Origin: Botryllus schlosseri
Lineage: Eukaryota
Direction of reading: 5' to 3'
Assembly: GCA_051294905.1 (NCBI GenBank)
Contig: CM119376.1
Span: 23,746,001 to 23,810,000, forward strand
Length of the DNA stretch: 64,000 nt
Position numbers and translations under genes: made by a program. Positions 15,550-59,637 of this stretch are shown one piece after another; within the stretch, counting starts at the first letter, position 1, and each line of letters begins with the position of its first letter. The notes below the pieces were generated by a model. That model ran no database searches and was not told where the DNA came from. It worked only from the letters and a program-made list of their open reading frames with translations.

Positions 15550-16148
15550 GTAACATAGTCCGATATTAAAGTCATACGGCAGGTCGTCAGTCATGTTATA
15601 ATATTTTTATTAAGTCCTACTCAAAACGACGCAAGGATATCCTATACACTGAAAAGATGTTGGGGAGTCGAACCGACTTGAAACATCCACGCACCCTACC
15701 TTAGCCTACATATAATGATAAACGAATTAAAATAAGAGGCATTAGCCTGTGCCTATTTGCCCTACGCTGGGACATGGGCACATCATAACACACATAGCAT
15801 GTAAATATAACACATAGATGTTCTCGACAAGACATAGGCCTATACTTCCCAGTATATTTGGTGAAGATAAATTTCCAGCAAGATAATAATTGAAGAAGGA
15901 TGGATGACCCATACAGCTATTGGAAAAGTACTCGAATTCAAATATTCGACGCCCACACGTGGCAATAAGCAACACTGCTGTGCAAACCACGAGAGGAACC
16001 TACAGAAGGTATATTAGACTTCACTTCCTCTTCATCGTTGTAGTGATATTTACACAATGCATATTATCACTATATATACCTGTATATATATGGGCGTATT
16101 TATTCGACAGTGTAGGTTTGAGAAGTACACTCGGGACGTAAGATTCTT

Positions 16149-17059
16149 GTGATGAAATTAGCGTTCGCTGCTCTTCTTCTCCTGGCTGTGGTAGCCGGGG
16201 GGTATGGTCGTACCATAAGTCACTACAAAAGTATATTGTGTAGACATCATACGCGGCACTACAGACATCTCTTCAATAAGTATCGTCGTCTGTATCTGGC
16301 AGCCAACAGAAACTATGCGGTCATGCTGAATCGCCAACGCCATATGGCTAGAATGCTGATGAGAACTGGTAACTCCCTCGTCAAACAAGCGCGCGTTATG
16401 AGAAAGTGGTAAGGTCCGATTTATCCTGAGACCAACACTAGTAAAATATGAAATGTGATTCTTTTACAGGAGAGGAGACGAAATTGAAGAATTAAAACCC
16501 ATTAATGATGAATCGTTCGACAGCGTCCCTGAAAACATCCAGGAACCCGATTTTGAACAAAATATCGAGAAAAGTGACCAGAAAACTGATCTCGATAATG
16601 TGGCCGACCACTTCGCCGATTCTGATGTAGAAAAGGACCAGTTATTGGCTTATGATGACCTTGATAAATCGGATCACGAAGGTATAGGTTTGCTTCATTG
16701 CTTATCACGCATGGCACTTTAGAAGCGACACGCTGCTGGCGTGCATGGCAGTCATTTATCAAATGCTGGAGATTGTAAATATAGTGATCTTATTGTGATT
16801 CAGACAGTCTCGATGTTGGCACCTCTATTGCGAAGTCCACTAGCGCACTGCAATGCCTTTTAAAAGACTTTGTTTTTCATTGATCCACTTTAGGCCTACA
16901 CATCTTTTAACCGGACCACATTTCTAAAAACTTCACTTGACATTTTGCGATACTTTCATAATCTACCAACTAATTTTACCATCGAACATTGACATAATAA
17001 CGTGACCCATTCATCTGGTTTGCATTGCAGAAGCCACGGAAGAAGCCAAAAGCGAATAG
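16149..17059 (+). CDS. Secreted cationic-peptide precursor 1 (signal + 68-aa Arg/His/Tyr-rich domain + G + acidic tail), 166 aa; putative antimicrobial/host-defence peptide
   Basis: Coding exons 16149-16408, 16470-16681, 17031-17059 (TAG); probable 5'UTR intron 16009-16115; AATAAA at 17209. Protein: MMKLAFAALLLLAVVAGGYG / RTISHYKSILCRHHTRHYRHLFNKYRRLYLAANRNYAVMLNRQRHMARMLMRTGNSLVKQARVMRKWR / GDEIEELKPINDESFDS...DDLDKSDHEEATEEAKSE. Gene model seen in sequence; function inferred. Confidence 0.85.
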
Positions 17060-18987
17060 ACCATGGACCGATACTACAAAACTGTGATGATCGATCCCGT
17101 GATATCCCATCACGAATTATTGTAATGATGTGTGTGATATGTATACTTGGGATTTTCAGAATCGTATTGATATGTTCGTGCATACGTAAAAAACTACATG
17201 GCGAATACAATAAATTTGTGCATTTGCAAGTTATACGTCTTCTTCTATCTTGTCGCATCACATGAGCCAAGGCGACAGTGAATAATCGCCGGGCCTTATA
17301 GACACTGAGCTATATAAACTATATGAGCTTATAGAACGTTGGGCCATTGCATGAATGGGAAAACGCGCAACAATATTCATATACGACAGATAAAAATTTC
17401 CCAAGGATGATGATGCCTCATTGTACAGAAAGATAGCCTACGTCATATCATATTTTATATGAACTGTAGAATAGCTACTGTTAATGTCGTGACAAGTCCA
17501 GGAACACTCGTGAGCAATCTGAGCATATGTTCAAAGGCAAAACCTTCCATACTATTGATCCGCTTGGTCGGATATGAAGACGTTAGTGTCCGAGCTCTTA
17601 GGCGCCAGGTCGTATAGAAATCGATGGTTTCGGTCAGGGATATCTAGATGTCCCTGGTTTCGGTCAACATGCGACGTTCATTTCTGGCAAGTTCTTTTAT
17701 CACCAACGATCTTTCTGGCTCTTAGTTTTAGAGCTGTACTTTACTGGCTGTTTTGTATATCCTGGAGCCCAAAAATTATGGGTTATTATGGGTTAAGCTT
17801 TTTCCATGCTCTTGCAGAACGAAAGCGAATAAGGCATGCTTAGGACTATAGCATCTACATGGCGTGTTAGGAGGGCCTGTGACCGAGCTAGCACAGCACT
17901 GTATACTGCACTAGGCCTTTATAAGCAATAAACCTTCGAAATAGAATAGAGTAGTAAATCTTTACTCAAGTAGGATACCAGTAAAAGTAGCGATTCCCAA
18001 GTATAGGTAAAAAGGGTAAGTAATCTGACCCTATAGTTTTACCTAAAACCTAAAAAAGACTGCCAAGTAGAAGTAGTCTGAGACCATACCTACTTGAGCA
18101 AGTAGTGCAAGTGGCCACAATCTACTTGAGTAGATAGAATAGAAGTACTTCGCTACTGGCCACACCTCAGTCAATAACAGAGGCAAGTAAATCGATCCTT
18201 TCTGCTGATCCATTAAAGTGAAATTATTTTAACTCCCCTTCCCGGACCGACAATTTGTTTAGTGGGCGCTTACCAATAAATCGATCTTTTGAAACGACTG
18301 AGATGAAATCAATACAAAATACAAATACAGTGGACAAATAATTATTTCACTCGTTAATCTGTTTCGGGTGGCCATGGATTCAATCATCTCTCTCTGTCTG
18401 TGATAACTTAATTCCTCAAATGGAACTAGTTGACTAATCGTAAATTAGGTACTTTGAGCAGGTAGAACGATGCCAATAGGAGCTTTTTGACACCACAAGA
18501 TACGGTTATAACTTGGATTGCATTTAAAACAAAAATCAAATAAAACAATTATGTTTAAAACATGGCCCTAGCTTAAAACATATTATTTATTGTTATTTTT
18601 AAGCCCCGATGTCGCGATTTTCAATTGTGTCGTCACAGTTGATTGTCGTTGTTATATGGTTTGGTCAACATGGTTCCTTTGACGGAAAAGCTTTCTGAGT
18701 CCTGTTTTAAACGGAACAAAAATATTGGTGGCCAGGACTCATTGTCATGAACCATTTTTACGGTCGGCGACCAGTTAAACATAACTACATGCTACAACTG
18801 CTGAACCGACGACAATTTCGTGTGTTGCAACCATTCCATATCGTATACGTTGACTGTATCTAATGCAAGTCGATCTTTGACGTCGACTACATGTCTTTTT
18901 GAAAGTATTTACACAATTATGACATCATTACACAACTCTTGAAAAAAATGGTTTTTATTTGAAATTACTTTTTTTCAAAACAAAGTC

Positions 18988-21376
18988 CAGTGTTGGGATG
19001 ACTCGAGTCATGACTTGACTCGAGTCAGACTCGAGTCACCTTTTTCGTATGACTTGACTTGACTCGAGTCACTTTGCTGAAATGACTTGACTTGACTTGA
19101 CTCGGCCTATCAGAAATGGGGATTGACTCGTGACTCGGAGCAAAATTCACGAGTCTATTTCAAGTCATCAAGTAATCGGTGTCGATCAGAATCACTGCAT
19201 CTTGCATATGTTCGGATTGTTAGCGAAACGCTGGTGTAACCCGTGAGAGCGACCAATCAATTAATGAACGTGCGTTTTACTGAGCCTCCATTGTTCTCTC
19301 ACAAATACATTAACCGCAAACGAAGTGATCGAAGCTTACAGCTTACGTTGCCGTAAACTAGTATAGTAAAGTAATTTTTGTTCTCTGTTTTACCTTAACC
19401 AAACTTCTTGTTTTATTGAAACTGAATTCGAATATAGTTTGTATCAGAGTTGGACCAATTACATTATTTCAGTTCAATTACAATTACAATTACAATTACT
19501 TTCATGCATGTTTCAATTACATTACAATTACAATTACTCCATGCTAAAAATATCAAATTACAATTACAATTACAATTACTCCTTGCACGCTTCAATTACA
19601 TTACAATTACAATTACAATTGCTGCTGTTGAACATGTAATTGAATAATCATAAATTCAACCGTGCTCCTTGACAACCGTAGCGTCGTAATTAACAACAAT
19701 TCAAGTATTCATGTTTCATTCATGATAAGCTAATACCCGGTAATTAATAAAAGAAAAACGTTTTCGAACTATTCCAGTATGCACTATGTCGTTGAAAAAA
19801 GTATTATAATCATGCACGGGTTGGATTTGCGTATATAGTATATAATTAAAGAAATAATATTATTTTTATCGAGGGACGTAGGAATTAGGATGAGTGGTGG
19901 AAACAAAACCGTGCTTTGTCAGATAAGACGTTGTATAATATCCGGTGGTCTGGTTAGTTAGCCAGACGAAGTAACGATGCAGCATCGTGATCTGAAATCG
20001 TATTGTAGATTGCCAACCCACGGATAGATGCGCAAGATGTGAGTCACGGATGAATGCACCGACAAACGTACTGCAGAGCCGGCTAAAAGCAGCAAACTTT
20101 GTAGTCCTAGAGCTGGCAATTCAAGCGTCCAAATTTGATGCATCTGGTCTTTATCGTAAGCTATTGATGCACTAATTCCGAAAATACAAATTAAAATCTC
20201 GTCAGGGCAATGCAACTGCTCCAAAATAGCCGTTTAAGGCCGACTGTTCTGAAAAGTGAGAGCGTCGCAGCAGCATGACCACAACAATGACCAATTACTC
20301 CCAGCGATTGTTCAGAACAATGCCGATTCCCAGACTTTCACGACTATTTTGGGATGGTACCATTGCCTGGAAATATACTTTTATTGCGGAGTCAGTGTGA
20401 CACATAGCTTTCGATTAGGACCATACATATCAAATTTCGACGCTTGGATCGTTAGCTATGGGACTATCAATTCTGCTGCTTTTAGCCGGCTCAGCAGTTC
20501 GCTTCTCGGCGTATTCAATCGTGAGTCACGTGTTGCGAATCCATCCGTTGGTTAGTAATCTAATAATTGTATACAATGGCAGCCGAGGCCAGCATAGCGG
20601 TAAAAATAAAAAACTTCGCCCGCAAGGGCGCAGTCAAGGGCTTCCTCGAATGGATCCACCAAATTCCTTGTCGACATTTAAAGAGAATGCATTATAAGTC
20701 AATTATTTTATGTTGTGCAACTTGTGCTTGTCAGGTCTCAATAGCAATTTAATGTAATTGAAATTGTAATTGAGCAAAATTTTTGTCAAATTACAATTAC
20801 AATTACAATTACACAAAATAAAAATGCTTCAATTACAATTACATTACAATTACATTGAAATATGTAATTAATTACATTACATTACATTACAAATTACAAT
20901 TGATCCAACTCTGGTTTGTATAGTCCTCAACCATTGGCGCAGGCTCGAATTGTATCATATCGATTTGTAAATGCGTAATGTATTGCATCTTATCAATTCG
21001 TATCTATTCCCTATCTTGGCTGGTAACTATAAACTGAGGTTTACGCATATGTGAGCGATACAGCGCCTTCTCGCATGTATATTTAACTTTATATTCGTTC
21101 ATCGGTTCAAAATCAATGACCACTCAATCTGTATTGCAGACAGCTAGCAAAATGCAATGGCGTTATCATGCCTCATACTTCGAAAAGGCAACTTGACTTG
21201 AATTGTGACTTGACTTGACTTGACTCGACTTGACTCGAGTCACCTCCAAAAATCGAGTGACTTGACTTGACTCGAGTCACCTTTGAAAATCGATTGACTT
21301 GACTTGACTCGAGTCAAAATGTTCAATGACTCGAAATGACTCGTGACTCGAAGGTAGTGACTTGATCCCAACACTG
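18988..21376. mobile_element. hAT-type element of the GACTCGAGTC family (CAGTGTTGGG ends), interrupted by an ATTACA-repeat MITE
   Basis: Ends CAGTGTTGGGA/TCCCAACACTG. After removing 19445-20913 it is colinear (rev-comp) with the uninterrupted copy at 45596-46553. Confidence 0.85.
19445..20913. mobile_element. hAT-type MITE with (ATTACA)n subterminal arrays
   Basis: TIR CAGAGTTGGACCAATT/AATTGATCCAACTCTG; perfect 8-bp TSD GTTTGTAT (19437-19444, 20914-20921). Confidence 0.88.
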
Positions 21377-22121
21377 TTGTAAACATGTTTTGAACAAACA
21401 GTTTTACCACACTTCTTGTTTTAAATACAACCCTATAGTTATAACCTATTTTGTTATGGATCGCTTTTGGTTAAAAAAAATGCAACATCCTGTAGTGTAG
21501 ATACCAATCTGTTCATATGTTATGATCTATGTCCATGTCCAGCAATGCCATTCGTGGGATGGTTCGAGGCATTGGAAGTGGAACACTGTTATCGGAGTTG
21601 TTTTTTACGCACGCATTCAGTGGCGTATATTCGCCACATTTCAGAAAGACCCAAATGTCAGACTTGTACCAACTAATCTGGATTTTCAGAATGCGCAGCT
21701 ATTATAGATCAAGAACTAGGCTACTTCATTTTCAACGCTCGCAACTAGCACTGGAACCACTCAAAATTAGCAGTTAGTCGATCTTCAACTAACTATATTG
21801 GTAATTTGTAGAAGTCTGGAATCATCAAGCGAGCAAGCGTGAGCAATTGGGCACGGAGCAAGCTCCTCGAATTTTCACTATAAATTCATTCCGTCACATT
21901 AAAGTCCGGAATTGTGTTTTGTTTTCAACTCAACACCGATGTCTTCGCACGTCGCAGACCGCTTTCGAGGCATGTCAGATCTGACATTCCTATGACACTG
22001 AAAGAGTTCACAGAGTTTGTGGTAATATAGTATATATCTTTCATTGATATAATATTTAAGCGTCGGGACATATAGACAGGTCGCCATAGCAATTCTCATG
22101 ATTGCTTGAGAGCATTTGATG

Positions 22122-24139
22122 CAGGGTTGTAATGACTCGAGTCAGACTCGAGTCACGATTTTTTTATGACTCGACTTGACTCGAGTCATTTTCTTGAAAT
22201 GGGAAAATGACTCGACTCGACTCGAGTCAATATTTGGATTGACTCGACTTGTACTCGAGTCATTACGCATGACTCGACCCAAGTCATTGACTCGGCTTAT
22301 TTTATATGACTTGAAGATGAAGAAATTTGCGAATCGTAATGGCTAGATCAACGCATCCGACGAATTCTGCCGACATCGCTATTTGTCACCACTGCTTTCG
22401 TTGCACTTGTCTGATATCAGATATGCCACCGTAAAAACAACAGGAAATGATACATAGTAGCAATAATGCATTGTACAAAATCGTCCAGTGATGAAGAGGT
22501 AATAGATCCTCCGCAATTAAAGTACTCAAGACTTTTCAATTATACAAGCAAACAATTGAAGCAAAATTAGAGCCAATGAAATGACTCAGATGGTCAAGAG
22601 ACTGATAAGCTCATGTGTAGATTTGAAGGCGATGATTCTTTGCATTTTTGGGCGACTAGAAAGAATGAGTATTCAATGCTCTTCAGTGTGGTTCAAAAAT
22701 GCTCTAGTGCACTAGTGGAACGTGTATTCAATAGATGTGGATTCATTCTACGGCCATGCCGCTTTAACATATCTGAGGATCTCCTTTCCACATTAGTATT
22801 TTTGAGGTGTAACTCATTGATTTGATCTGCTGTCTGTGAAGACACACAATGCCCCTCGTCCATTTGACGTTTTGTTAGGTATGTGCATTGTGCACGTGAG
22901 TATAATAATAAATGGATAATGTTGTGTGATGTTTGTACAATATGGCTGTTCTAAAATATCTTCTTTTTTATTTTACTGGGTGGTTACTTGATAAAATTGT
23001 TATGTTGCATAAAAGGAACACTGAATCTGGCTTAATTTGAAAAAAGTGGAATCAATGATGTGAGAGGAGAATATTTTGGATTTGAAAATAAATGGAGTAT
23101 TTTAGTTAGAAATTCTCTCACATAATATAATTACATAGTAGTAAGCCGACTATTCTTTCATATCCAAAACATTCTACTCTAATAACTTCACTTTTTCTAG
23201 TTGGAATTGAGTCAAATTTGCTATGAATCATATTTTTACACAATGTAACAATATTATGAGATAGCCGGTAAAATTCTAAAATCTCTATTTGTAATTAGTC
23301 TAAAATTTTCTTTCACAGCATTGCTTTCTACTGGTTGGAATTGAGCCAAATTTGATTTTTTAGGCAATCTAGTAATTTTAAGAAGTAGCCGGAAAATTTG
23401 AAAAAATGTTTTTGAACAGCTCCATTGTACAAATATTTATCCAATGCTGTAACTGCGATGTAGTCTGTAATGCAATTGGGAAAACCTTTAGTATAATCAA
23501 AAGGTATCTGTTCTGTTGTCGCTGCACAATGCACATAGTTGCATGCACGCTTTTACAGCATGCTCGCCTGTTGTAAATACCTCTACATAAACATGCATCT
23601 ATTGATTCTCTATCAACTAGTATCTTGCCGTGAATTTGTTGGTTCTCTATCAGATAGTATGTAGACGTGAATTCGTTGGTTCTCAATCAGCTATTCGTGA
23701 GCTATCGTCGATGTGCTCATAATAAAAACTGAATGCTTGTATTGGTGATGTTTCTGACTGACAAGAGAGATATTTGATTGTAAGTTCAAAGATTAGTAAA
23801 GTTATATTTAGCATCGGTAAATGAGGCAAGGACCTGTCCGTTATCTGCCTAAATAAACACGTGCCAAGACTCTGATAGGGACAAAATGAGCATGTTTCGC
23901 AAACAAGGAATTCGATATCACCCAAGCAGGATTGAAAACATGAGTTGAACATATGACTTCAATACTGTGACTTGGACTCGACTCGAGTCATAACACCATG
24001 ACTCGGACTTGACCCTTTAAACGGTGACTTGGACTCGGACTCGAGTCTGTGATGAATTGAAAATGACTCGACTCGAGTCAAAACCACAAAAGTATGATTG
24101 ACTCGTGACTCGTGACCATGTGACTTGGTTACAACCCTG
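22122..24139. mobile_element. hAT deletion derivative (GACTCGAGTC family) retaining a transposase C-terminal relic
   Basis: Ends CAGGGTTGTAA/TTACAACCCTG; TSD ATTTGATG/ATTCGATG (7/8); carries a hAT dimerisation-domain relic and a nested MITE at 22941-23424 (TSD TTGTACAA). Confidence 0.85.
22613..22825 (+). pseudogene. hAT transposase C-terminal dimerisation domain remnant
   Basis: DSLHFWATRKNEYSMLFSVVQKCSSALVERVFNRCGFILRPCRFNISEDLLSTLVFLRCN fits the L-x-FW...YP-x-L...S-x-x-x-ER-x-FS...R-x-x-L...L-x-FL-x-x-N pattern, with the IPAT segment lost. Confidence 0.8.
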
Positions 24140-27100
24140 ATTCGATGATTATTACTTTACATTTGCACTTACAAATTAAATTTGTCGGTGCAAAATAGGT
24201 AGCCTACCTTCGTGGGATTATTCCTGTGGTCCGGATGTTCACTGTTGATGTAAGGGCTAATGCGTGTTTTAATATGACGTTAGCATCCGTTTAGCCTATG
24301 CATAATAGGTCTAAGTATGCTCTACAAGTCTACAGAATCTATGGTATAACTGCTAAGCTTCCATCAGGGATATATAGAACTCCGGGATGGCTGACTTCAT
24401 TTTGGCCTTTACCTAAGTAGGTCCAGAAAGTTACCTGCAATCTGCGTCGAAATATCCACTTTTCTGCAAGCTAGCGATACAGCTGTTTCTAGAATAACGA
24501 TCCTCAGCCTTTTGCGGAATAGTTAGTAAGCTAGACATTCTTCCCTTATCACAACCTTACTGCTGTATAGCCAACCTAGTAAAGTATGACACTGCTTTAT
24601 AGCCGACCAAGTTAACTATGACAACTCTGAATTTCAGTAAATCATGAATGTGTTTAATTTCTACACATCATATAATTGGCATCGGGCCATAAATAACAGA
24701 GTGAATAACGAATGATATCAGCGTCTTCTACCTATTTACAAGCCATTGTCGGAAACCTTGCAGCTGGAAGGGGAGGGGAGGTTTATAGGATTGATTAAAT
24801 TAACCGTTTCAATTAGGGTTAATCGACAATTACCATGGAGTATAGGGTTGCATTTAAAACAAACATGTTTAAAACTAGGCCCTTGTATAAAACATACTTT
24901 TTTAAGCCATGACGTCAAGAATATTCAATAGTGACGTCATATTGGATTGACAATATAGTGTAAATATAGCTGCTTTGACGGAATATCTGTGCTATTGCTG
25001 TTGAACCGACTATTTTGAGGGTTCCAGCCATCCCATATCGATATTAGTCGGCTATATCGCGTGGTAATCGTCCGTAGGCTCATACAACACGTATTTTGGA
25101 AAGTATTTACACAATTATGGCATAATTTTACAACTTAGAAAGAATTTTTTTCAAAAGGCCTTTGTTCAAAACACTGTTTAAAGCACGTTTTAAACATAGT
25201 GTTTCAAACACCGTTTGTTTTAAATGCACCCCCACCATGGAGCATTTCCAATAACGAAAAGATAGCACGGCCTGTAAGGACTCGAAATTGTGATAGCAGC
25301 ATTGTCAGCTTCTATGTCACTCAATGAAAGTTGATCAAGAAATCAACACACCATTGATACTTCTCTTCAGGTTTAAATGTAGCCAAAATAGCAGTTTGGT
25401 ACATATCATTATCAATTTAAGAAGCATTCGGTAGACCCAGTTGTTGAATTCATCTGATATTTTGTTCACCGAGAAATAGTTTCATGACCGCAGTGAAGAA
25501 ATTACCACCATGGCTTAAAGGTACATCACGAATAGGCCTCCTGAAGCATTTCATGCCATTTATCAGTTAAGAAATATTCAGTGTCACTGTCTTGCAGATT
25601 TTCCGATGGAGCGATAGATGATTCCATGTCAAAAAATCATCTCGGTGAGGAGGCACGAGATCCAAATATTCAGATCGTGGCCATCTTTGCCAAGATTTCA
25701 ATGGAATGTGCCCAGTATAATATATCAGGATATCCACTGTTGACGTGATGCAAATGCTGGAACATCGCGTTTGTTTTTCCGGAATCTGCAACAAAAATGA
25801 ACAAATGATGTATTTAGAGACACAAATTAACTTTAAGAATACATATAGATGTATACAGAGTTGGTCAGTAATGAAGAACTTCTACTTCATTGCAGTACTC
25901 AAGTAGGTGTTGCCTATTTTCGAAGATACATCTTGTAATTTTGAAGCAGCCATCTCCAAACCTAAGTACCTTGCAGGCATTTCACTTTCTACAGCTACTT
26001 GAGGAAGTTCAAATACCAGTACGCCCGGGAATACAACTGTTACTTGAGTAGCAATGCAGACTACTTTAACCACATCAGGATTAATGTAAATCGCTCATTT
26101 AATAGCGTATCACTAGAATCAGCCAAACTTACCTTGGGCCGACTGAGGAGAGGTCCATGCGTTATTGCGACGATTTGACTAAACCTTGCAAATTGAAAGC
26201 AATCTTCAGAGTTTTCTCTTCCTCCACCGTACAGACCTATAGCCTATAGGCTATAAGTGTTTATATGGTAAAGACAGGCCGTATCTCAGGGTCGTATCGT
26301 GTCCTGACGATTGTGTTGGCTTATCCATTCAAGGGAGTGGGCATCTTCATGGCTTCAGTAAGAGCAAATGGTCAACAAATGCAGTGGCCATATACTGGGA
26401 GTCAGCCATTGGCAGTTCACAACAGTGCACTTCTGTTGAGGTATAATTCCAGTACTGTAGCATTGAGGTGCCGTTCATTAACAAACATATGCCTGCCTTG
26501 TTTTACCAGACATGTAACTGATGAATAGTATCTGTAAAAAGAGATTGGAATCAACTGTTGTTATGGACACTTACAACTGCAACGACCTTGACGTGTTGTG
26601 TTTGTATTAGATTCAAATGTTTGGTTATCCCTAATTGAAATGCCTCTTGAATCTTGCACACCGGTGGTAAACTCAGTGGCTCCAATTCTTACTAGGAATA
26701 TTCCAGCAATTATCTGGAATACCGGTAAGCCTGCAATATTCACACATTAATCTATAGTACAAGATCTTAGCTGACGAAGTCCCTCCTAACGGTCGCCTTC
26801 ATAGTTGACACGGCACAGTCTAAACGTACGCTTGTACTTGTACAATGTATACAGCCTTGGATGGTGACATACATTCGCATAACATACCGGTAAATGAAAA
26901 ACATACCGCAAGGCGTAATCAAAATCATACTGCGGATATCAATGTTAACGTTGGAAATTATTCTACATTTTGTTATCTTCTCACGATTATCAGCGCAGCA
27001 AAACATGTTACATAAGATACTACAGAAGCAGAGATATTCCGAAGGCGAGTAAATGACCGTACCGGTATACCGGTAAATTGCTGCTGAAGGAATAGGGCTA

Positions 27101-27354
27101 ATACCGCAAAGTTTCAGACTACCTGAACATCTCATAACCTAGTTAACCTCTAGCTTTATATAATAACATAAACATGGATATTATATGCCTCTACCGCTCT
27201 CAGAAACTTAAAATTACACACAGATGAAGCGGCTGAACGGAACGTGCATCAAAACTGAATACGCGAATCTGGACCCACTTAGGTAATACCGCGATGACGC
27301 AGTCAGTCATCCCGGAGTTCTATATATCCCTGGCTTCCATTAGTTCAATCCTAT

Positions 27355-29179
27355 ACGGCCGTAAACCAAACTTTACGCTGATTGGTCGAGAGACAATGGC
27401 CATGGATACGACGCAGCAACGGAGGACGCTGCATTTACTTCAACATATAGTCGGCACTACGATGTATTCCTATAGCCGTGTAGACTGTATAAAAACGACA
27501 AGATTACAGTTAAATGTTTATTTCTTCATCAATAATGAAATTAGGAATGGAAATAAAATATTTAATAACATATACTGAAATATAATGCCGAAATACTACT
27601 GTGTTTATGAATGCAGTGCCACCAATGGCAATGAACTGGGGCGAAGAACAGATCTTTCAATTCATTTTCTTCCAACGCAAAGGACAGAAAGGCTTGGGAA
27701 GGCAGAGTATAAGAAGGCATACATTTGGGCCTGAATTTGATGCCAATAAGAGTGATTTACTTGTAATTATCTAGCAGCAGTCAAATAAAAACTCCTTTCC
27801 TGTGATTTCTGCCCAAGTTCAAATTTCATGAACTCATTGCATGTGCTGTTACGATACCTCAAGCACACCAGTGCAGATGAGGTCTGCTCAGCTAGAATCA
27901 CTCTATCATGTGAAGCACCCAGATATCCATATGGAAAAAGAACATCACCAATCTTTGCTACATTCACATGCGTGATGCTTAGTAGTCTTGAATGGCGCTT
28001 TCTTCGTGCAATAACCCCCACAATATTGAATACCTGTTCATACTGTACTGTCATTGAAGTGATTTGAAAAGAGATGTTGCATATGGAGTACCTGCTGTCT
28101 TGTTCCCCTCAAAGCAGTTCAAAACCCTACCAAAATTGCTACTTGTGAGTCAAAGAGCCCTATGTATTTGCCCCATTCTGCACATCCTCTCTGTTCTGGT
28201 GTTCTGTGGGCTTAGGTAGCTAATCTGCATATGACTGACTTCGTTGGCTTCTCACCCTAAGATTTCGGTGATGGATTTGAAGATTCCATTTCAAGGCTAC
28301 ACGATGGCGATTCTAGATCAGGATCACCAGATGATTTGCATGTGCAGCATCCACAACATTGCAGGAAGACAGTTGACACGGCATGGAGTTCAGGGTCCGC
28401 CTCTTTGCAATGCGCAAAATCTTCTGCTTCACCACGGAGATTGCGACTGGGAATCGCACCTCTCTTTAGACGTGACTGTATTGGTATATCTATAATGCAC
28501 TAGCAGCAAAATCTTCCTTGCAAAATTGGTAGGAGCAAATTATTATTATTATTAATATTGTAGACAACAGTGGTGCTTTTATCCTGTTTAAGGCTTTGTG
28601 CTCCACGACATGACAGTATTCGAACTGATCAATGCATTTATTCTTGTCTTTGACATTCTTTCCACTCTCTCATGCATCGGCTCGCGATTCATCGGCACTT
28701 TAGCTGCCGACTTGTAGCTCGCCTCACTGTGATTTCTGGACTTTTTAAGTCAGTGCAACTGCAGTGAGGTCGGCGATGAGGAGTAAATGAAGCTTGTGGA
28801 AGTAGGCTTGAAATCCTGCCTTATTACTCTGCATTCCCAAGCCTTCTTGACCTTGGACCGTTGGAAGGAAATGAATGGAAAAATCTGTTCTTCCCCAGTT
28901 CATTGCCATTGGTGGCACTGCATTCATAAACACAGTAGTATTTCGGCATTATATTTCAGTATATGTTATTAAATATTTTATTTCCTTTCCTAATTTCATT
29001 ATTGATGAAGAAATAAACATTTAACTGTAATCTTGTCGTTTTTATACAGTCTACACGGCTATAGGAATACATCGTAGTGCCGACTATATGTTGAAGTAAA
29101 TGCAGCGTCCTCCGTTGCTGCGTCGTATCCATGGCCATTGTCTCTCGACCAATCAGCGTAAAGTTTGGTTTACGGCCGT
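27355..29179 (-). mobile_element. ISL2EU-like non-autonomous DNA transposon, copy 1 (~300-bp TIRs; THAP, SWIM-like and YqaJ relics)
   Basis: Termini ACGGCCGTAAACC/GGTTTACGGCCGT flanked by AT on both sides (a TA reading is also possible); near-identical inverted copy at 35797-37642; strand given is that of the YqaJ relic. Confidence 0.8.
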
Positions 29180-30494
29180 ATAGGCCTATACATGTTTAAA
29201 TCGCGTCGTGTTAAAGCTGACTCAGTAAGTACAGACCTCATTCAATCACATATCTTTGCTGGGTGACGGATACCAGGGTAACGGGAGCATATTATACATA
29301 CACCATGAGCACATCCATGGAGAGAACAGCCTGTGACCGAATTTGGATTGCCGTGGCGATCTCATCATTCCAATCATTAGAATATATGCAACACTCGATA
29401 GTGGCCTCATACTCTTTACGCGCCGTATCAGTATCAGTATAGAGGATGTAGTCCTACATCCTCTATAGTATCAGTTTTATCTGTAATTCGAATATCGTGT
29501 GTAACAGTTTTTTTACCCGTGGCTAAATAAAGACAACCGGAAACGGGGGAAAACTAAATAACCAAATTTATTGAGAAGTGGTTTAACTGTCAAAACACTT
29601 GATTATATAGGGTTATCATATTTTGGAATCCGAAAAGTAGAAAACGTTTTACAGGTCATAAAAGTCAGATTACTGGACTAGAAAACTGCTGGTTATAAAA
29701 TTTGTACTAAAAATCTTGTTGTGTTGACTAATAAAAGGGCATTTTTTCATTCTTACTCCCGAATGACCCGCTCGAACGACCGCGTTATAGATTTCGCGTC
29801 ATTTATGTCGTTTTTTTAGTTCAGCGTTCAGCCTGTTCATTACTCCGGCTGTCAAAGCTCTAAAGGAGGATTTCCAAAAATGAGGACATTTGAGTGTCCT
29901 CTTAGGACATTTTCGATTTCTTTAAAAAGGAGGACAAATTCTCATAAATGACGACATATGGTAACCCTAGAGGCCTGGATCATACCATTTTGCGCTTCGG
30001 TAAAAGCAAAAGTCGACATGTCATCAACGAAAAATACAAGAACAACTGTACAGCACATTGCTGAGAAAGAAAAACAGCGCTTCGGATATAGTGACTTGTA
30101 GATGTTTGTATGTGCACTGTGCACTGTACGACTGTACGTACAGCACGCTGTGGATCTTAATTGTACCTGTGCAATGTGCACTGTACACATAAATTACATG
30201 TAAATTATTTCTATATGCAAACGTAGTATATAGTTTAATAAGCAATAAAGATCACATAGTTAGGATGTGGGTGTCAAAAAAAATATTTCGTTGTAAGTTA
30301 TACATCCAAATTTGCTCGTAGGCGGACACTTATACGGCATCCGTCCCATATTAGTCGATGATATTTTTCTTCCAACTAATAGCTATAGAGGAAGTCAGCA
30401 ACAGTAAGACACCCGGAACGAGAACCGTTTATGCGGATGAGAATTCCGACTGTGTAATGCGTGGTGCTAAAGTCCTTCCTGCAGGCTATGACAG

Positions 30495-30566
30495 TTTATA
30501 AGTAAAGTCGATCCATCAGTGTGAATAAAACATCCTTCGTCCATCGTGCACGATTGCAGTAGAACG
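30495..30566 (+). promoter_or_regulatory. Probable core promoter and non-coding first exon of peptide precursor 2
   Basis: TTTATAAGTAAA at 30495-30506, Inr-like TCAGT at 30516-30520, strong donor ACG|GTAAGT at 30566/30567, acceptor TTTCAG at 30730. TATA-Inr spacing is slightly short. Confidence 0.5.
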
Positions 30567-30765
30567 GTAAGTACAGCAGCTTTTGTTCGTTCCTCACTAC
30601 ATTCTGAAGGGGAAAATTTAAGTTTCGGATATGAGTGCTATTTAACATTCTAACAATCTGCTGCTCATATGAGGTACCCGTCTTTTTCGTCGTTTCATCA
30701 TCATGGAGCGTATTATCGCATATATTTCAGGTTTACACGGAGATTTTCGAGAGCAATCACCAAAC

Positions 30766-32468
30766 ATGAAATTAGCCTTCGTTGCACTTGCACTGATGGC
30801 AGTACTAGCCGGCTGTTCAGGTGCTAGGTGTCATACGAAGTTCGAAAGACTTTTCCATTCGTACTTTGGACTGTATCACCGTACTCTGAAGAAGACGTAC
30901 GCTATCAAGCGTCATATGAGAGGGGTAGAACATTATCTGTGGCAAAATGGAGTTAAATTGAACAAATATGGCCGTTCTCTCATCCGCTACAGGTAAAGTC
31001 AATACTTATAGCATCCGACTTATTATATTAGTCACATATATCGCCGCTGTGGAATCAAAGTATAGCTTACTTTCATTTTGCACATTTTGAGAAAATTAAT
31101 TCATGTTAAGTTTTCATTTTCTTTCGGTCATATCTTGGCCACGATAAACTTTGAGAAAATGTGATAAACATAAACATGGTCATGATATGGCCGAAAAAAT
31201 GAATATTTTACAAAAACTTGATTTTCTATAACTTTGAAAAATGGGTCTCAAAATTTAAAAAAAGACATAAGATACTTTGATCCCATCGCGACAATATACG
31301 GTATCATGAGTCTCATCTCTAATTCCAATATCAAATTATGGAGTTTGAATATCGCCTTGATAAGACACTACAGGACAAAGTGTATCGTGAGGAGCCATAC
31401 GCACGAATTACCTCTTCCATTCTTGAGCGGCGAGTTAGCATGCTTTTTACCGCACCAACAGTAAACAATAGTACTTGAGTCATTATTTGATAGCCAATGC
31501 ACGCTTTGAAGGACAAGGTAATTTCTGTTGTTCGTGTCGCAAGATTGTGAAATCATATAGGATCGGTATATCTGAGTTTCTCATTAACAGTCCCTTAAAA
31601 TGCGTAGGCCTATATATCTGTAAAAGTCCCACATGATACGTTGACTTCATGTCCATGGAATAATAAGGCTGTATTATTGTGTCGCAAATAGGAATGGTCC
31701 TGAACAATGCCTATTTGTCTGTCAGACCTCGTGGGGATCAGGAGATTGCTGACATTCCTGATATCCAAAATTTGGAAGACACTGAAGACATGAATCCGAC
31801 TGCAGACGAAGCGAATCAATACGAAAACTTGTTTGAGGATTCAGACCTTGACGATCATCACGGTGAGACACGTCTTAAATCAGATTCTTTCTAGCCTACT
31901 TGATTTAAATGCGAAGCCTGACTTTTTGTTTTTCACAAGCATTATACTATGTGAGATATGGCTGTCATTACGGTAGAACTGAAAAATGGAAATATTCTAT
32001 ATTTATTTTAGGATAGCGTACTATTGTCAGTGGTCTAAATAAATGACGTGACGCGTGCAAACTCAGCACAAACAATACTATTGCAGGTTAATATCCATAG
32101 TGAGTGAGAGAAGGGAGGGGGTAGGTTGGGACATCACCGTATAGTGGGGGTGGTTACAGTGGCATAGTGGAAATATGCTGACACGCTGTACGTCCATGAT
32201 GTTGACATCTCATCCCTCCCCCAATTAGCATATTATGTATGTAGTTTGGATATAGATGGTTGAAGGCACAGTATCACATGTATAAAAGGGATGAGACCAG
32301 GTAGGCCTATATTTACACCGGGTGTATCACTATAAATGCGTTCAGCATATATTATATCTGTTTACGATTCGTATCATTCATCACTCGGGAAATTCACAGA
32401 ATAATAAAAAAATGTACATGCTTACTTTTACAGACGAAGACGAAGAATCACAGTCTATTCAAGAATGA
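30766..32468 (+). CDS. Secreted cationic-peptide precursor 2 (paralogue of precursor 1), 132 aa; putative antimicrobial/host-defence peptide
   Basis: Coding exons 30766-30992, 31726-31862, 32434-32468 (TGA); 5'UTR intron 30567-30730; AATAAA at 32534. Protein: MKLAFVALALMAVLAGCSG / ARCHTKFERLFHSYFGLYHRTLKKTYAIKRHMRGVEHYLWQNGVKLNKYGRSLIRYRPR / GDQEIADIPDIQNLEDTED...DLDDHHDEDEESQSIQE. Intron phases (2, then 1) are the same as in precursor 1. Confidence 0.85.
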
Positions 32469-33544
32469 AGAAGATCGATATCGAAACAGTCCGCATTTGC
32501 ACAATTATGTTGATGTAATAACGCCATTCAGCTAATAAATATTCGGGGATTCATTTTGCTATTTGTTATTTATTGGAAAATGCCCTTATATCTAGACTAG
32601 AAGATAAGAATGATATCACAGTCATGAAAAATAATATATTTCCTTTGTGATATTTGCGCCGGCGTTGGGATCAAGTCCTTCGAGTCACAAGGCATTTCAT
32701 GAGTCATTGCAAATTTTGCCGTTATCGACGAGTAGGGGTGGATGGCATGTCACATCTCGTATGCGATGTCGCTGCTGCTGATGGATCGAACCTTATTGAA
32801 AACGTAACCGGACATGGAGTTCAGTAAATAGAGGATTAGAATTGTTTACATGACTTCAAGACGTTGAATAGTCGATGACTTGAACATTGACTCGAAAATT
32901 TGTCTCCTAATGTTAAGTTGTTCAGAAGACGTGACTTAAGCCATCAACACATGTCTGTATAGATATTTAAATTGATCGTAACCTCATATTCTTCAATATG
33001 ATATCAAATCATTCAAATGACTATTTGACAATGAAGGTCTTAGCTATTAGTCAAATTGTAGATCCAGACGTGAGTAAGGGTGAGCGAGACAGGACGCCCC
33101 GATTGGAACATCCTCTTCTTGAAAAAGTCTCCTAATTTATTCGTGTCCTTGTCTCTCTTTAATTGGAAGAACATAAACTTCTACTTCACAAGTTGTAAAT
33201 GGTGAATATTAAGTAATTCACTACATATGTTAAAGAAGAAGTAAAAGTATAGTCTAAGATTACATTAACTTGAGTAAGTGCTCCGAGTATGGAAAGACGC
33301 ATGCGTAGAAGAACATCATTATACTAACCATCACTGGGTCAAACCGTGCGGATTCCGTATGCGAACTCAGAATTGCAGCCACTGTAATCTCCCTCATTGT
33401 CGCACAGTCGTGGTCGCATATCACTATCTCATCAAGTGCATTTTTTTTGCTATAGGATAGGGAAAGTCCTCACAATAGGCCTCGCTATAGCATATATAGT
33501 GTGAAGATATCAGTATCAGATGAAGAAACGTCGCGCTAAGAGCC

Positions 33545-33702: not shown

Positions 33703-59637
<25,935 letters not shown>

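What the first reader, a model, noticed from the sequence alone, without database searches (positions are those of the whole stretch)
16149..32468. Two-gene family of long cationic/anionic secreted precursors: a candidate new host-defence peptide system
Seen: two genes 13.7 kb apart share a 5'UTR intron, a phase-2 intron at the end of the cationic region, a phase-1 intron and a short acidic last exon. Their signals are near-identical (MKLAF[AV]AL[LA]L[LM]AV[VL]AG). The mature regions align without gaps over ~50 aa (LF-x-x-Y-x-x-LY ... R-x-[MV]-x3-L-x3-G-x2-L-x-K-x2-R-x-[ML]-x2-[WY]R) at only about a quarter identity. Hydrophobic residues recur every 3-4 positions, as in an amphipathic helix. 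Known: ascidian styelin, clavanin and Ciona MAM/PAP precursors use signal + cationic peptide + anionic C-terminal extension, but their mature peptides are about 20-35 aa. Inference: a rapidly diverging family of unusually long (59-68 aa) membrane-active peptides that I cannot assign to a named family. ORF finders see only the first coding exon.
Basis: partly seen in the sequence, partly recalled or inferred. Interest (0 to 1): 0.92.

Follow-up and report, generated by a model that had tools for sequence, protein, structure and literature searches.

The report
Paired cationic-anionic secreted peptide genes
A colonial sea squirt carries two neighbouring, actively transcribed genes, with no detectable relatives, whose secreted products join a long positively charged helix to an acidic tail; this is the layout of sea-squirt antimicrobial-peptide precursors, but no activity has been shown.

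Summary
Two same-strand genes (A 16152-17059, B 30766-32468) share a 14/19-identical signal peptide, a phase-2 and a phase-1 intron at matching positions, and a short acidic last exon.

RNA reads confirm all three introns of gene B, its cap site and its poly(A) site. Gene A is supported only indirectly.

Each protein consists of:
- a signal peptide;
- a 59-68 aa cationic domain (net +13/+18) that is amphipathic over its whole length (period 3.55-3.58, P~0.001);
- an invariant Arg-Gly-Asp;
- an acidic tail (net -22/-23).

Most or all 18-residue windows pass the published HeliQuest filter that found active Ciona peptides. No homologue turned up in Pfam, PDB, the Atlas or 1.84 billion representative proteins. 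There is no third copy in the genome. The pair is unrelated to botryllin, the styelin-like peptide of this botryllid, which lies on another chromosome.

My verdict is a new, lineage-restricted family of a known kind (ascidian signal/cationic-helix/anionic-propiece precursors). Host-defence function is plausible (~0.5) but untested.

It is either the Gly-amide/Asp cleavage boundary typical of ascidian peptides or an integrin motif. The scan has flagged other cationic-anionic precursors in this genome, but not this family.

The parts
15970..16009 (+). Gene A: putative short non-coding 5' exon (start approximate), ending at donor AAG|GTATAT
   Evidence: Inferred by analogy with gene B's verified 39-nt 5' exon. 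Sequence read. Not verified by RNA.
16010..16110 (+). Gene A: putative 5'UTR intron (GT..AG)
   Evidence: Sequence only. Unverified.
16111..16408 (+). Gene A: exon with 5'UTR, start codon 16152, signal peptide (16152-16208) and cationic amphipathic domain (from 16209)
   Evidence: ORF. Gene model. Charge +18. HeliQuest windows 51/51 pass. AF2 single helix, pLDDT 80.
16409..16469 (+). Gene A: phase-2 intron (61 nt, GT..AG)
   Evidence: Same phase and position as the RNA-verified intron of gene B.
16470..16681 (+). Gene A: exon encoding RGD (16471-16479) and most of the acidic tail
16682..17030 (+). Gene A: phase-1 intron (GT..AG)
   Evidence: Inferred. The last-exon peptides of A and B resemble each other (x-x-x-E-E-x-x-S).
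17031..17230 (+). Gene A: last exon, with 9 acidic codons plus stop (to 17059) and a 3'UTR carrying AATAAA at 17209 (end approximate)
   Evidence: The word share of RNA runs is consistent with exons only.
30497..30566 (+). Gene B: TATA box (30497-30501), cap site about 30528 and 39-nt non-coding 5' exon (30528-30566)
   Evidence: 24 reads carry the template-switch oligo directly before 30528. TATA.
30567..30730 (+). Gene B: 5'UTR intron. Its acceptor is also used for spliced-leader trans-splicing.
   Evidence: Cis joint in 53 raw reads and one contig. 18 reads carry oligo plus leader before the acceptor. The leader 19-mer has about 776 genomic copies. An SL gene ends ..GTATTAAG|GT.
30731..30992 (+). 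Gene B: exon with 5'UTR, start codon 30766, signal peptide (30766-30822) and cationic amphipathic domain
   Evidence: AF2 helices 21-60 and 67-75, low confidence.
30993..31725 (+). Gene B: phase-2 intron (733 nt), containing a high-copy repeat at about 31100-31270
   Evidence: Joint in X1 and X3 contigs and 41 raw reads.
31726..31862 (+). Gene B: exon encoding Pro-RGD (RGD 31730-31738) and the acidic tail
31863..32433 (+). Gene B: phase-1 intron (571 nt)
   Evidence: Joint in X1 and X3 contigs and 45 raw reads. It is reported as 31860>32433 with one inserted T because of the synonymous SNP at 31861.
32434..32555 (+). Gene B: last exon, with 11 acidic codons plus stop (to 32468), 3'UTR, AATAAA at 32534 and a main poly(A) site near 32555
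   Evidence: The depth of raw reads falls after 32567 and the X3 contig ends at 32533. Signal.

Best explanation
These are two old tandem paralogues of a lineage-restricted gene family in a botryllid sea squirt. Each encodes a secreted prepropeptide: a cleavable signal peptide; one long Arg/His/Tyr-rich amphipathic alpha-helix (up to 68 and 59 residues, net +18 and +13, one Cys); and a disordered acidic tail of about the opposite charge (-23, -22). The most likely mechanism (inferred, not shown) follows. The acidic tail keeps the cationic helix harmless during synthesis and storage. A protease cuts N-terminal of the Asp in the conserved Arg-Gly-Asp, as in styelins and clavanins. The exposed Gly may then be converted to a C-terminal amide. 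The freed helix, or shorter pieces of it, binds and disturbs anionic microbial membranes. Shown: the genes, the splicing and high expression of B, the charge partition, the whole-length amphipathicity, and the absence of homologues. Inferred: the processing site, amidation, membrane activity and the immune role.
For: - The gene models are in frame with canonical splice sites.
- All three introns, the cap site and the poly(A) site of B are confirmed. About 60 reads per million were laid in a bulk RNA run (782 of 12.9 M records).
- Exon-sized word shares in many probable RNA runs from several studies support both genes.
- Charge is +18/-23 and +13/-22.
- My HeliQuest re-implementation reproduces Table 3 of PMC7387483 exactly. 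With it, 51/51 (A) and 27/42 (B) 18-residue windows meet the criteria that yielded five of five active Ciona peptides. Whole-domain moment is 0.32/0.33, P~0.001, with period 3.58/3.55.
- AF2 predicts a continuous helix for A (pLDDT 80; 89-93 over residues 41-80).
- The signal is conserved at the protein level (14/19) despite six synonymous differences, while the mature part is at 22% identity. This is the signal-conserved, mature-hypervariable pattern described for LCAMP families (PMC7387483).
- RGD is kept although the third base of each of its three codons differs, and Arg differs at all three (AGA GGA GAC against CGT GGG GAT). It fits the X-Gly|Asp boundary implied by cleavage N-terminal of D/DD plus C-terminal amidation in styelins and clavanins (PMC7387483, PMC10608444).
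- Botryllin of the same animal also has a long (158 aa) precursor (PMC9966394).
Against: - There is no activity, peptide or cell-type data.
- The precursors (132, 165 aa) exceed the 50-100 aa class filter, and each cationic domain has a Cys, which that filter excludes.
- The hydrophobic stripe is narrow (31-37% hydrophobic residues) and the helix is two to three times longer than known ascidian peptides. Such helices also occur in non-immune proteins.
- No furin or dibasic site is conserved at the boundary.
- No NF-kB-like motif lies near either gene.
- Gene A's junctions were not checked with reads.
- Passing a permissive physico-chemical filter is weak evidence on its own.
Confidence: 0.5

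Rival explanations
1. RGD-dependent bridging or adhesion protein (opsonin-like or matrix/tunic protein). The protein stays uncleaved or acts as a whole. The cationic helix sticks to anionic surfaces (microbes, sulfated tunic glycans, nucleic-acid nets), and the exposed Arg-Gly-Asp at the helix/tail junction is bound by haemocyte integrins.
For: RGD is the longest identical block outside the signal peptide. It is conserved although the third base of each of its three codons differs, and Arg differs at all three. It sits between a helix and a probably disordered tail, so it should be accessible. Ascidian phagocytosis and macropinocytosis involve integrins and RGD-bearing molecules (PMC5465252).
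Against: A tripeptide is weak evidence. The same residues are explained by a Gly-amide/Asp cleavage boundary. There is no similarity to any known integrin ligand.
Confidence: 0.15
2. A secreted protein with another role that also uses a cationic/anionic two-domain design. Examples are granule-packing or cytotoxic cargo of morula cells used in allorejection, a self-coacervating adhesive or tunic component, a gamete-surface protein, or a signalling peptide precursor.
For: The facts are the same: secretion signal, charge-balanced halves, fast divergence, tandem duplication, high expression. Tyr/His richness would suit phenoloxidase cross-linking. Nothing ties expression to immune cells.
Against: There are no conserved dibasic sites for hormone processing (sequences). 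No repeats or Gly/Ser/DOPA-type adhesive composition are present. The coherent amphipathic helix is not required by these roles.
Confidence: 0.25
3. Transcribed but not functional as proteins (young or decaying orphan ORFs).
For: There are no homologues anywhere. The mature regions are barely alignable.
Against: Both copies keep an open frame across three coding exons, the same intron phases, a conserved signal peptide and RGD after synonymous sites have diverged. Amphipathic phase is kept over about 60 residues in both. In gene B no non-synonymous variant was seen in the cationic domain. Expression is high.
Confidence: 0.05

Closest known systems
Ciona linear cationic alpha-helical AMP precursors (Ci-MAM, Ci-PAP and the families of PMC7387483)
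   Same: The order is signal peptide, cationic amphipathic helix, anionic C-terminal region. The signal is conserved within a family while the mature part diverges. An acidic residue sits at the boundary instead of a dibasic site. The HeliQuest values fall in the same range.
   Different: There is no sequence similarity and the signal consensus differs. The precursors are 132-165 aa rather than 50-100. The cationic domain is 59-68 aa rather than about 20-30. One Cys is present. An RGD is conserved.
Styelins and clavanins (Styela clava) and botryllin (Botryllus schlosseri)
   Same: These are haemocyte peptides made as prepropeptides with an acidic C-terminal extension, cut N-terminal of Asp and C-terminally amidated (styelins, clavanins). 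Botryllin's precursor is of similar length (158 aa).
   Different: tblastn of A and B against the two botryllin loci of this genome gives only noise (E>=0.12). Botryllin lies on another chromosome (C11). Its intron splits the mature peptide, whereas here signal plus the whole cationic domain sit in one exon. Mature peptides there are 23-37 aa.
Dicynthaurin and halocidin (Halocynthia aurantium)
   Same: They are helical cationic ascidian peptides with a single Cys that forms covalent dimers (PMC10608444). A and B each have one Cys near the N-terminus of the cationic domain.
   Different: Those chains are much shorter (15-30 aa). There is no sequence relation. Dimerisation here is pure conjecture.
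Acidic RGD-bearing secreted integrin ligands (osteopontin/SIBLING-like, by analogy only)
   Same: They are secreted, carry an RGD and have a strongly acidic, probably disordered region.
   Different: There is no homology. Those proteins lack a long cationic helix. The comparison rests on my own knowledge and was not tested.

Membership tests
Ascidian LCAMP-type precursor (operational class of PMC7387483) | N-terminal secretory signal peptide | tested here: met
   The sequence has MK, a 13-residue hydrophobic core and a small-residue -3/-1 site (G-Y-G|R; C-S-G|A). This was read directly from the sequence. No SignalP was available.
Ascidian LCAMP-type precursor (operational class of PMC7387483) | 18-residue windows with hydrophobicity 0-0.6, hydrophobic moment 0.1-1.0 and net charge +3 to +10 | tested here: met
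   A passes in 51/51 windows and B in 27/42. The calculation was validated against the paper's own Table 3 values.
Ascidian LCAMP-type precursor (operational class of PMC7387483) | Precursor length 50-100 aa and no cysteine in the mature part | tested here: not met
   The precursors are 165 and 132 aa, with one Cys in each cationic domain. These are screening conveniences, not biology: botryllin is 158 aa, and dicynthaurin and halocidin carry a Cys.
Ascidian LCAMP-type precursor (operational class of PMC7387483) | Anionic C-terminal region following the cationic helix, with an acidic residue at the boundary | tested here: met
   Net charge is -23 and -22. The boundary is R-G-D in both. Helical periodicity of the tail is not supported.
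Ascidian LCAMP-type precursor (operational class of PMC7387483) | Antimicrobial activity of the released peptide; haemocyte expression or induction | not testable with these tools
   The run metadata are coded, and no tissue or challenge information is available.
Styelin/botryllin family | Detectable sequence similarity to styelins or botryllin, and the same gene structure | tested here: not met
   tblastn against the genome's two botryllin loci gives E>=0.12. The intron position differs. The profile search of 1.84 billion proteins found nothing.
Ci-MAM / novel Ciona LCAMP families | Family-specific conserved signal peptide (MDRKIVFAL.. or MNKSALL..) | tested here: not met
   The signal here is MKLAF[AV]AL... 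The consensus sequences come from PMC7387483.
RGD integrin ligands | Exposed RGD that is required for integrin-dependent cell binding | tested here: inconclusive
   The motif is present and conserved at a helix/disorder junction. Binding is not testable here.

The most novel reading that the evidence does not exclude
The proteins are bifunctional immune bridges rather than simple pro-peptides. A roughly 10-nm polycationic helix coats microbes or extracellular nets. The invariant Arg-Gly-Asp beside it presents the coated target to RGD-dependent phagocyte integrins. Cleavage at Gly|Asp would then act as a switch from opsonin to free lytic peptide.
Probability: 0.1. Interest if true: 0.7.

Novelty: new member of a known kind. 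Interest (0 to 1): 0.4.

Why it matters
Only one gene-encoded antimicrobial peptide (botryllin) turned up in my literature searches for this colonial chordate, a model for allorecognition and regeneration. A second, unrelated and highly expressed family would widen its known humoral arsenal. If the peptide is active, it would be an unusually long, salt-water-adapted amphipathic helix to study. The conserved RGD at the pro-piece boundary offers a simple experiment that separates 'cleavage/amidation site' from 'integrin motif'. The case also shows that such genes escape ORF finders and protein databases: neither protein was found in the collections searched.

Tried and rejected
- **Family and structure searches.** Pfam on all four coding pieces gave nothing above noise. 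A PDB profile search gave 0 hits at E<=10. The ESM Atlas gave no usable hit for either exon 1.
- **Protein database searches.** The word-index search with B exon 1 found no candidate. The exhaustive profile search of 1.84 billion representatives gave 0 hits at E<=0.001.
- **Further paralogues in the genome.**
  - Single-protein, profile, exact-DNA and degenerate back-translated signal-peptide searches found only A and B.
  - The weak extra hits (L002, L005-L010, L013-L015, L044-L050) have no signal-plus-cationic open frame or lie in repeats.
  - A feature scan and a permissive tblastn over 264 kb around the window found no third copy or pseudogene.
- **Non-coding similarity.** The 5' regions of A and B show none.
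- **Literature.** A text search for the signal-peptide strings gave 0 papers.
- **Complex prediction.** The cationic domain against the acidic exon returned 'no answer' (score 0.00). This is no evidence either way.
- **Acidic tails.** There is no shared alpha-helical periodicity, so a charge-zipper helical hairpin is not supported.
- **Promoter motifs.** None of the 5 NF-kB-like motif matches in the window lies near either gene, and the count is at chance level.
- **Internal processing.** Internal dibasic sites (RR in A, KK in B) do not align, so conserved internal processing was rejected. A furin reading of the boundary fits A (R-K-W-R) but not B (R-Y-R-P-R).
- **Botryllin/styelin membership.** Rejected.
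- **Full-length proteins.** The spliced full-length proteins were not submitted to search, fold or look-up tools, because they have no reference and would have had to be typed.
Full report
**What is there**

The window comes from chromosome-scale contig C6 of a 495.5-Mb sea-squirt genome. Two + strand open frames begin with nearly the same signal peptide: 16152-16408 (gene A) and 30766-30992 (gene B).

Canonical GT..AG splicing joins each frame to two further coding exons:
- Gene A: 16152-16408 | 16470-16681 | 17031-17059, giving 165 aa.
- Gene B: 30766-30992 | 31726-31862 | 32434-32468, giving 132 aa.

In both genes the first coding intron is phase 2 and the second is phase 1. Both last exons encode 9-11 mostly acidic residues with a shared x-x-x-E-E-x-x-S pattern. 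Each stop is followed by AATAAA, at 17209 in A and 32534 in B.

**RNA evidence**

I had one read-laying run and used it on gene B.

- Transcript contigs from two independent studies (X1, X3) and raw reads of a bulk RNA-seq run (X23) show three joints.
  - 30566>30731: the 5'UTR intron, seen in 53 reads.
  - 30992>31726: seen in 41 reads.
  - 31862>32434: seen in 45 reads. The tool reports this one as 31860>32433 with an extra T, because of the synonymous C>T variant at 31861.
- Depth is about 100-fold over exons and zero over unique intron sequence, with only 6% of the run read.
- 782 of 12.9 million records were laid, roughly 60 per million, so the gene is strongly expressed in that sample.
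- Twenty-four reads carry the template-switch oligo immediately before 30528. This places the cap site 31 nt downstream of a TATAA box.
- Raw-read depth collapses after about 32560, which fits the poly(A) signal.
- X16, labelled as another organism, is low-coverage DNA about 99% identical to the window. It gives no cross-species information.

For gene A I have only indirect support. Fourteen probable RNA runs, plus several of unknown type, come from several studies. They hold 0.36-0.50 of the sampled 31-mers of 16100-17250. Exons alone would give about 0.55, and DNA-like runs hold 0.75. Gene A's junctions are therefore inferred from sequence and from the parallel with B. Its 5'UTR intron (about 16010-16110) is unverified.

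**Are the two genes related?**

- The signal peptides are 14/19 identical (z=8.6 against shuffles).
- The signal peptide is conserved at the protein level only. The 57 nt are 41/57 identical, with six purely synonymous codon differences. The duplication is therefore old, not a recent conversion.
- The cationic domains align without gaps over 49 residues at 11/49 identity and 38% nucleotide identity. On its own this is marginal (z=2.3, P=0.03).
- The acidic tails are not significantly alignable (P=0.18).
- Whole-protein blastp gives E=3e-12. tblastn in a 264-kb database gives reciprocal hits at 4e-5 and 9e-5.

Homology is secure when the identical intron phases and positions, the same strand, the adjacency and the conserved RGD are added. 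The pattern is the classic 'conserved signal, hypervariable mature peptide'.

**The proteins**

- After a predicted signal cleavage (G-Y-G|R in A, C-S-G|A in B) comes a domain of up to 68 (A) or 59 (B) residues.
  - Net charge is +18 and +13.
  - There are zero or two acidic residues, 5-6 His, 5-6 Tyr and a single Cys near the N-terminus.
- The tails have net charge -23 and -22, so the proproteins are slightly negative overall.
- I re-implemented the HeliQuest calculation. It reproduces the hydrophobicity and moment values in Table 3 of PMC7387483 to three decimals.
- With it, 51/51 windows of A and 27/42 of B satisfy the criteria those authors used in Ciona. All five peptides they chose from that screen and synthesised were active.
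- The amphipathic phase is kept over the entire domain.
  - The whole-length moment is 0.32 and 0.33, against 0.11-0.12 for shuffles (P~0.001).
  - A single sharp spectral peak falls at 100.5 and 101.5 degrees, a period of 3.58 and 3.55.
- AlphaFold2 predicts one continuous helix for A (mean pLDDT 80; 89-93 over residues 41-80).
- For B it predicts helices 21-60 and 67-75, at low confidence.
- The hydrophobic stripe is narrow (31-37% hydrophobic residues).
- The acidic tails contain prolines and show no shared helical periodicity, so they are probably disordered.

Immediately after the phase-2 intron both proteins read Arg-Gly-Asp: W-RGD-EIEEL in A and R-P-RGD-QEIADI in B. The third base of each of the three codons differs, and Arg differs at all three (AGA GGA GAC against CGT GGG GAT). 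The tripeptide is therefore held by selection on the protein. It is the longest identical block outside the signal. There are two readings.

1. **Processing boundary.** Ascidian helical peptides are cut N-terminal of an acidic residue rather than at dibasic sites. Styelins are cut before D and clavanins before DD (PMC7387483). Both are C-terminally amidated (PMC10608444), which by established PAM chemistry requires a Gly before the cut. X-Gly|Asp is exactly what is conserved here. The predicted products end ..KWR-amide and ..RPR-amide.
2. **Integrin motif.** Ascidian phagocytosis and macropinocytosis involve integrins and RGD-bearing molecules (PMC5465252). The motif lies at an exposed helix/disorder junction.

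I cannot decide between these readings with the tools available.

**Relatives**

- None were found. This covers Pfam, the PDB, the Atlas, the word-indexed 5.8-billion-protein set and an exhaustive HMM search of 1.84 billion representatives. Neither search retrieved the window's own proteins; at least protein B, the query of the word-index search, is absent from that collection.
- Within the genome, protein, profile, exact and degenerate DNA searches, plus a feature scan of 264 kb, found only these two genes.
- No eukaryotic genome collection other than the window's own assembly was available. 'Restricted to this lineage' therefore means only 'no detectable relative among deposited proteins'.

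**Relation to the known peptide of this animal**

The published botryllin qPCR primer (PMC9966394) matches the genome exactly on contig C11, with a second copy 55 kb away. This identifies the genome as a botryllid very close to Botryllus schlosseri.

Botryllin's first coding exon carries the signal and the N-terminal part of the mature peptide, with an intron inside GWYNKHK|PTIHK. That is a different gene structure. tblastn of A and B against both botryllin loci gives only noise. The new family is therefore not styelin/botryllin. Botryllin's 158-aa precursor does show that long acidic pro-regions are normal here.

**Interpretation**

The best-supported reading is a new family of the known ascidian signal/cationic-helix/anionic-propiece kind. 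Its most likely role is host-defence peptide precursor (confidence about 0.5). Under this reading the acidic tail masks the helix until cleavage at Gly|Asp. Every functional step is inference.

Several points count against a simple filing:
- The precursors and cationic domains are two to three times longer than in known members.
- A Cys is present.
- The hydrophobic face is narrow.
- No immune-type expression data exist.

The rivals are:
- an RGD-dependent bridging or adhesion protein (0.15);
- another secreted role using charge-balanced halves, such as cytotoxic-granule cargo, adhesive or tunic component, or gamete or signalling protein (0.25);
- non-functional ORFs (0.05). This last is disfavoured by frame, phase, signal, RGD and amphipathic phase all being retained after synonymous sites have diverged.

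Variants seen in gene B are L14I, L58L, P100P, L117F, H121H and D124G. There is no amino-acid change in the cationic domain, but the numbers are too small to weigh.

**Novelty and score**

The architecture is known and the family is new. The verified expression, the unusually long coherent helix and the conserved RGD make it a reasonable bench target, so I score it 0.4. Other cationic-anionic precursors have been flagged elsewhere in this genome by the scan (s1-231974, s1-234317, s1-249639, s1-268369). None of them is this family, as far as their notes show.

Noticed in passing
window 30528-30731: The same acceptor (AG at 30729-30730) is used in cis, joined to a capped 39-nt 5' exon (53 reads), and in trans, joined to the spliced leader ..ATTGGAGTATTTGGTTGTATTAAG (18 reads with template-switch oligo plus leader). 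The leader 19-mer has about 776 genomic copies against 8 for the control. One copy (L038:1499-1522) is followed by a GT donor.
   Followed up: partly
window 44696-45148 (+): An intronless 150-aa ORF has a basic helix-loop-helix domain (Pfam HLH, E=2e-10), 12 kb downstream of gene B. It is a probable transcription-factor gene.
   Followed up: partly
window 27294-27734 (+) and 28745-29138 (-); also 35610-36023 (+): Near-identical ORF fragments lie in inverted orientation about 1 kb apart between the two genes. They read ..[20 protein letters not shown].. and a Cys-rich [19 protein letters not shown].. that looks THAP-like from memory. A third copy lies downstream. They look like remnants of a transposable element.
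   Followed up: no
window 31100-31270 (inside gene B's phase-2 intron): This is a short high-copy repeat. Contig depth spikes, and many contigs run on into unrelated sequence in the RNA and DNA runs.
   Followed up: no
L016 and L017 (G000:C11:9117417 and 9172179): The published botryllin primer hits two loci 55 kb apart. Both encode MKFLVP.. signal plus GRRRRRGKSGWFKK..GWY(N/K)KHK first exons, so botryllin has a tandem paralogue with a diverged second exon.
   Followed up: partly
window 19025-19150, 21240-21410, 22142-22282, 23959-24087, 50706-51038: ORF fragments rich in the repeated peptide ..(T/S)RVKSS(H/Q).. recur on both strands across the window. They suggest a dispersed repeat family with an internal tandem motif.
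   Followed up: no
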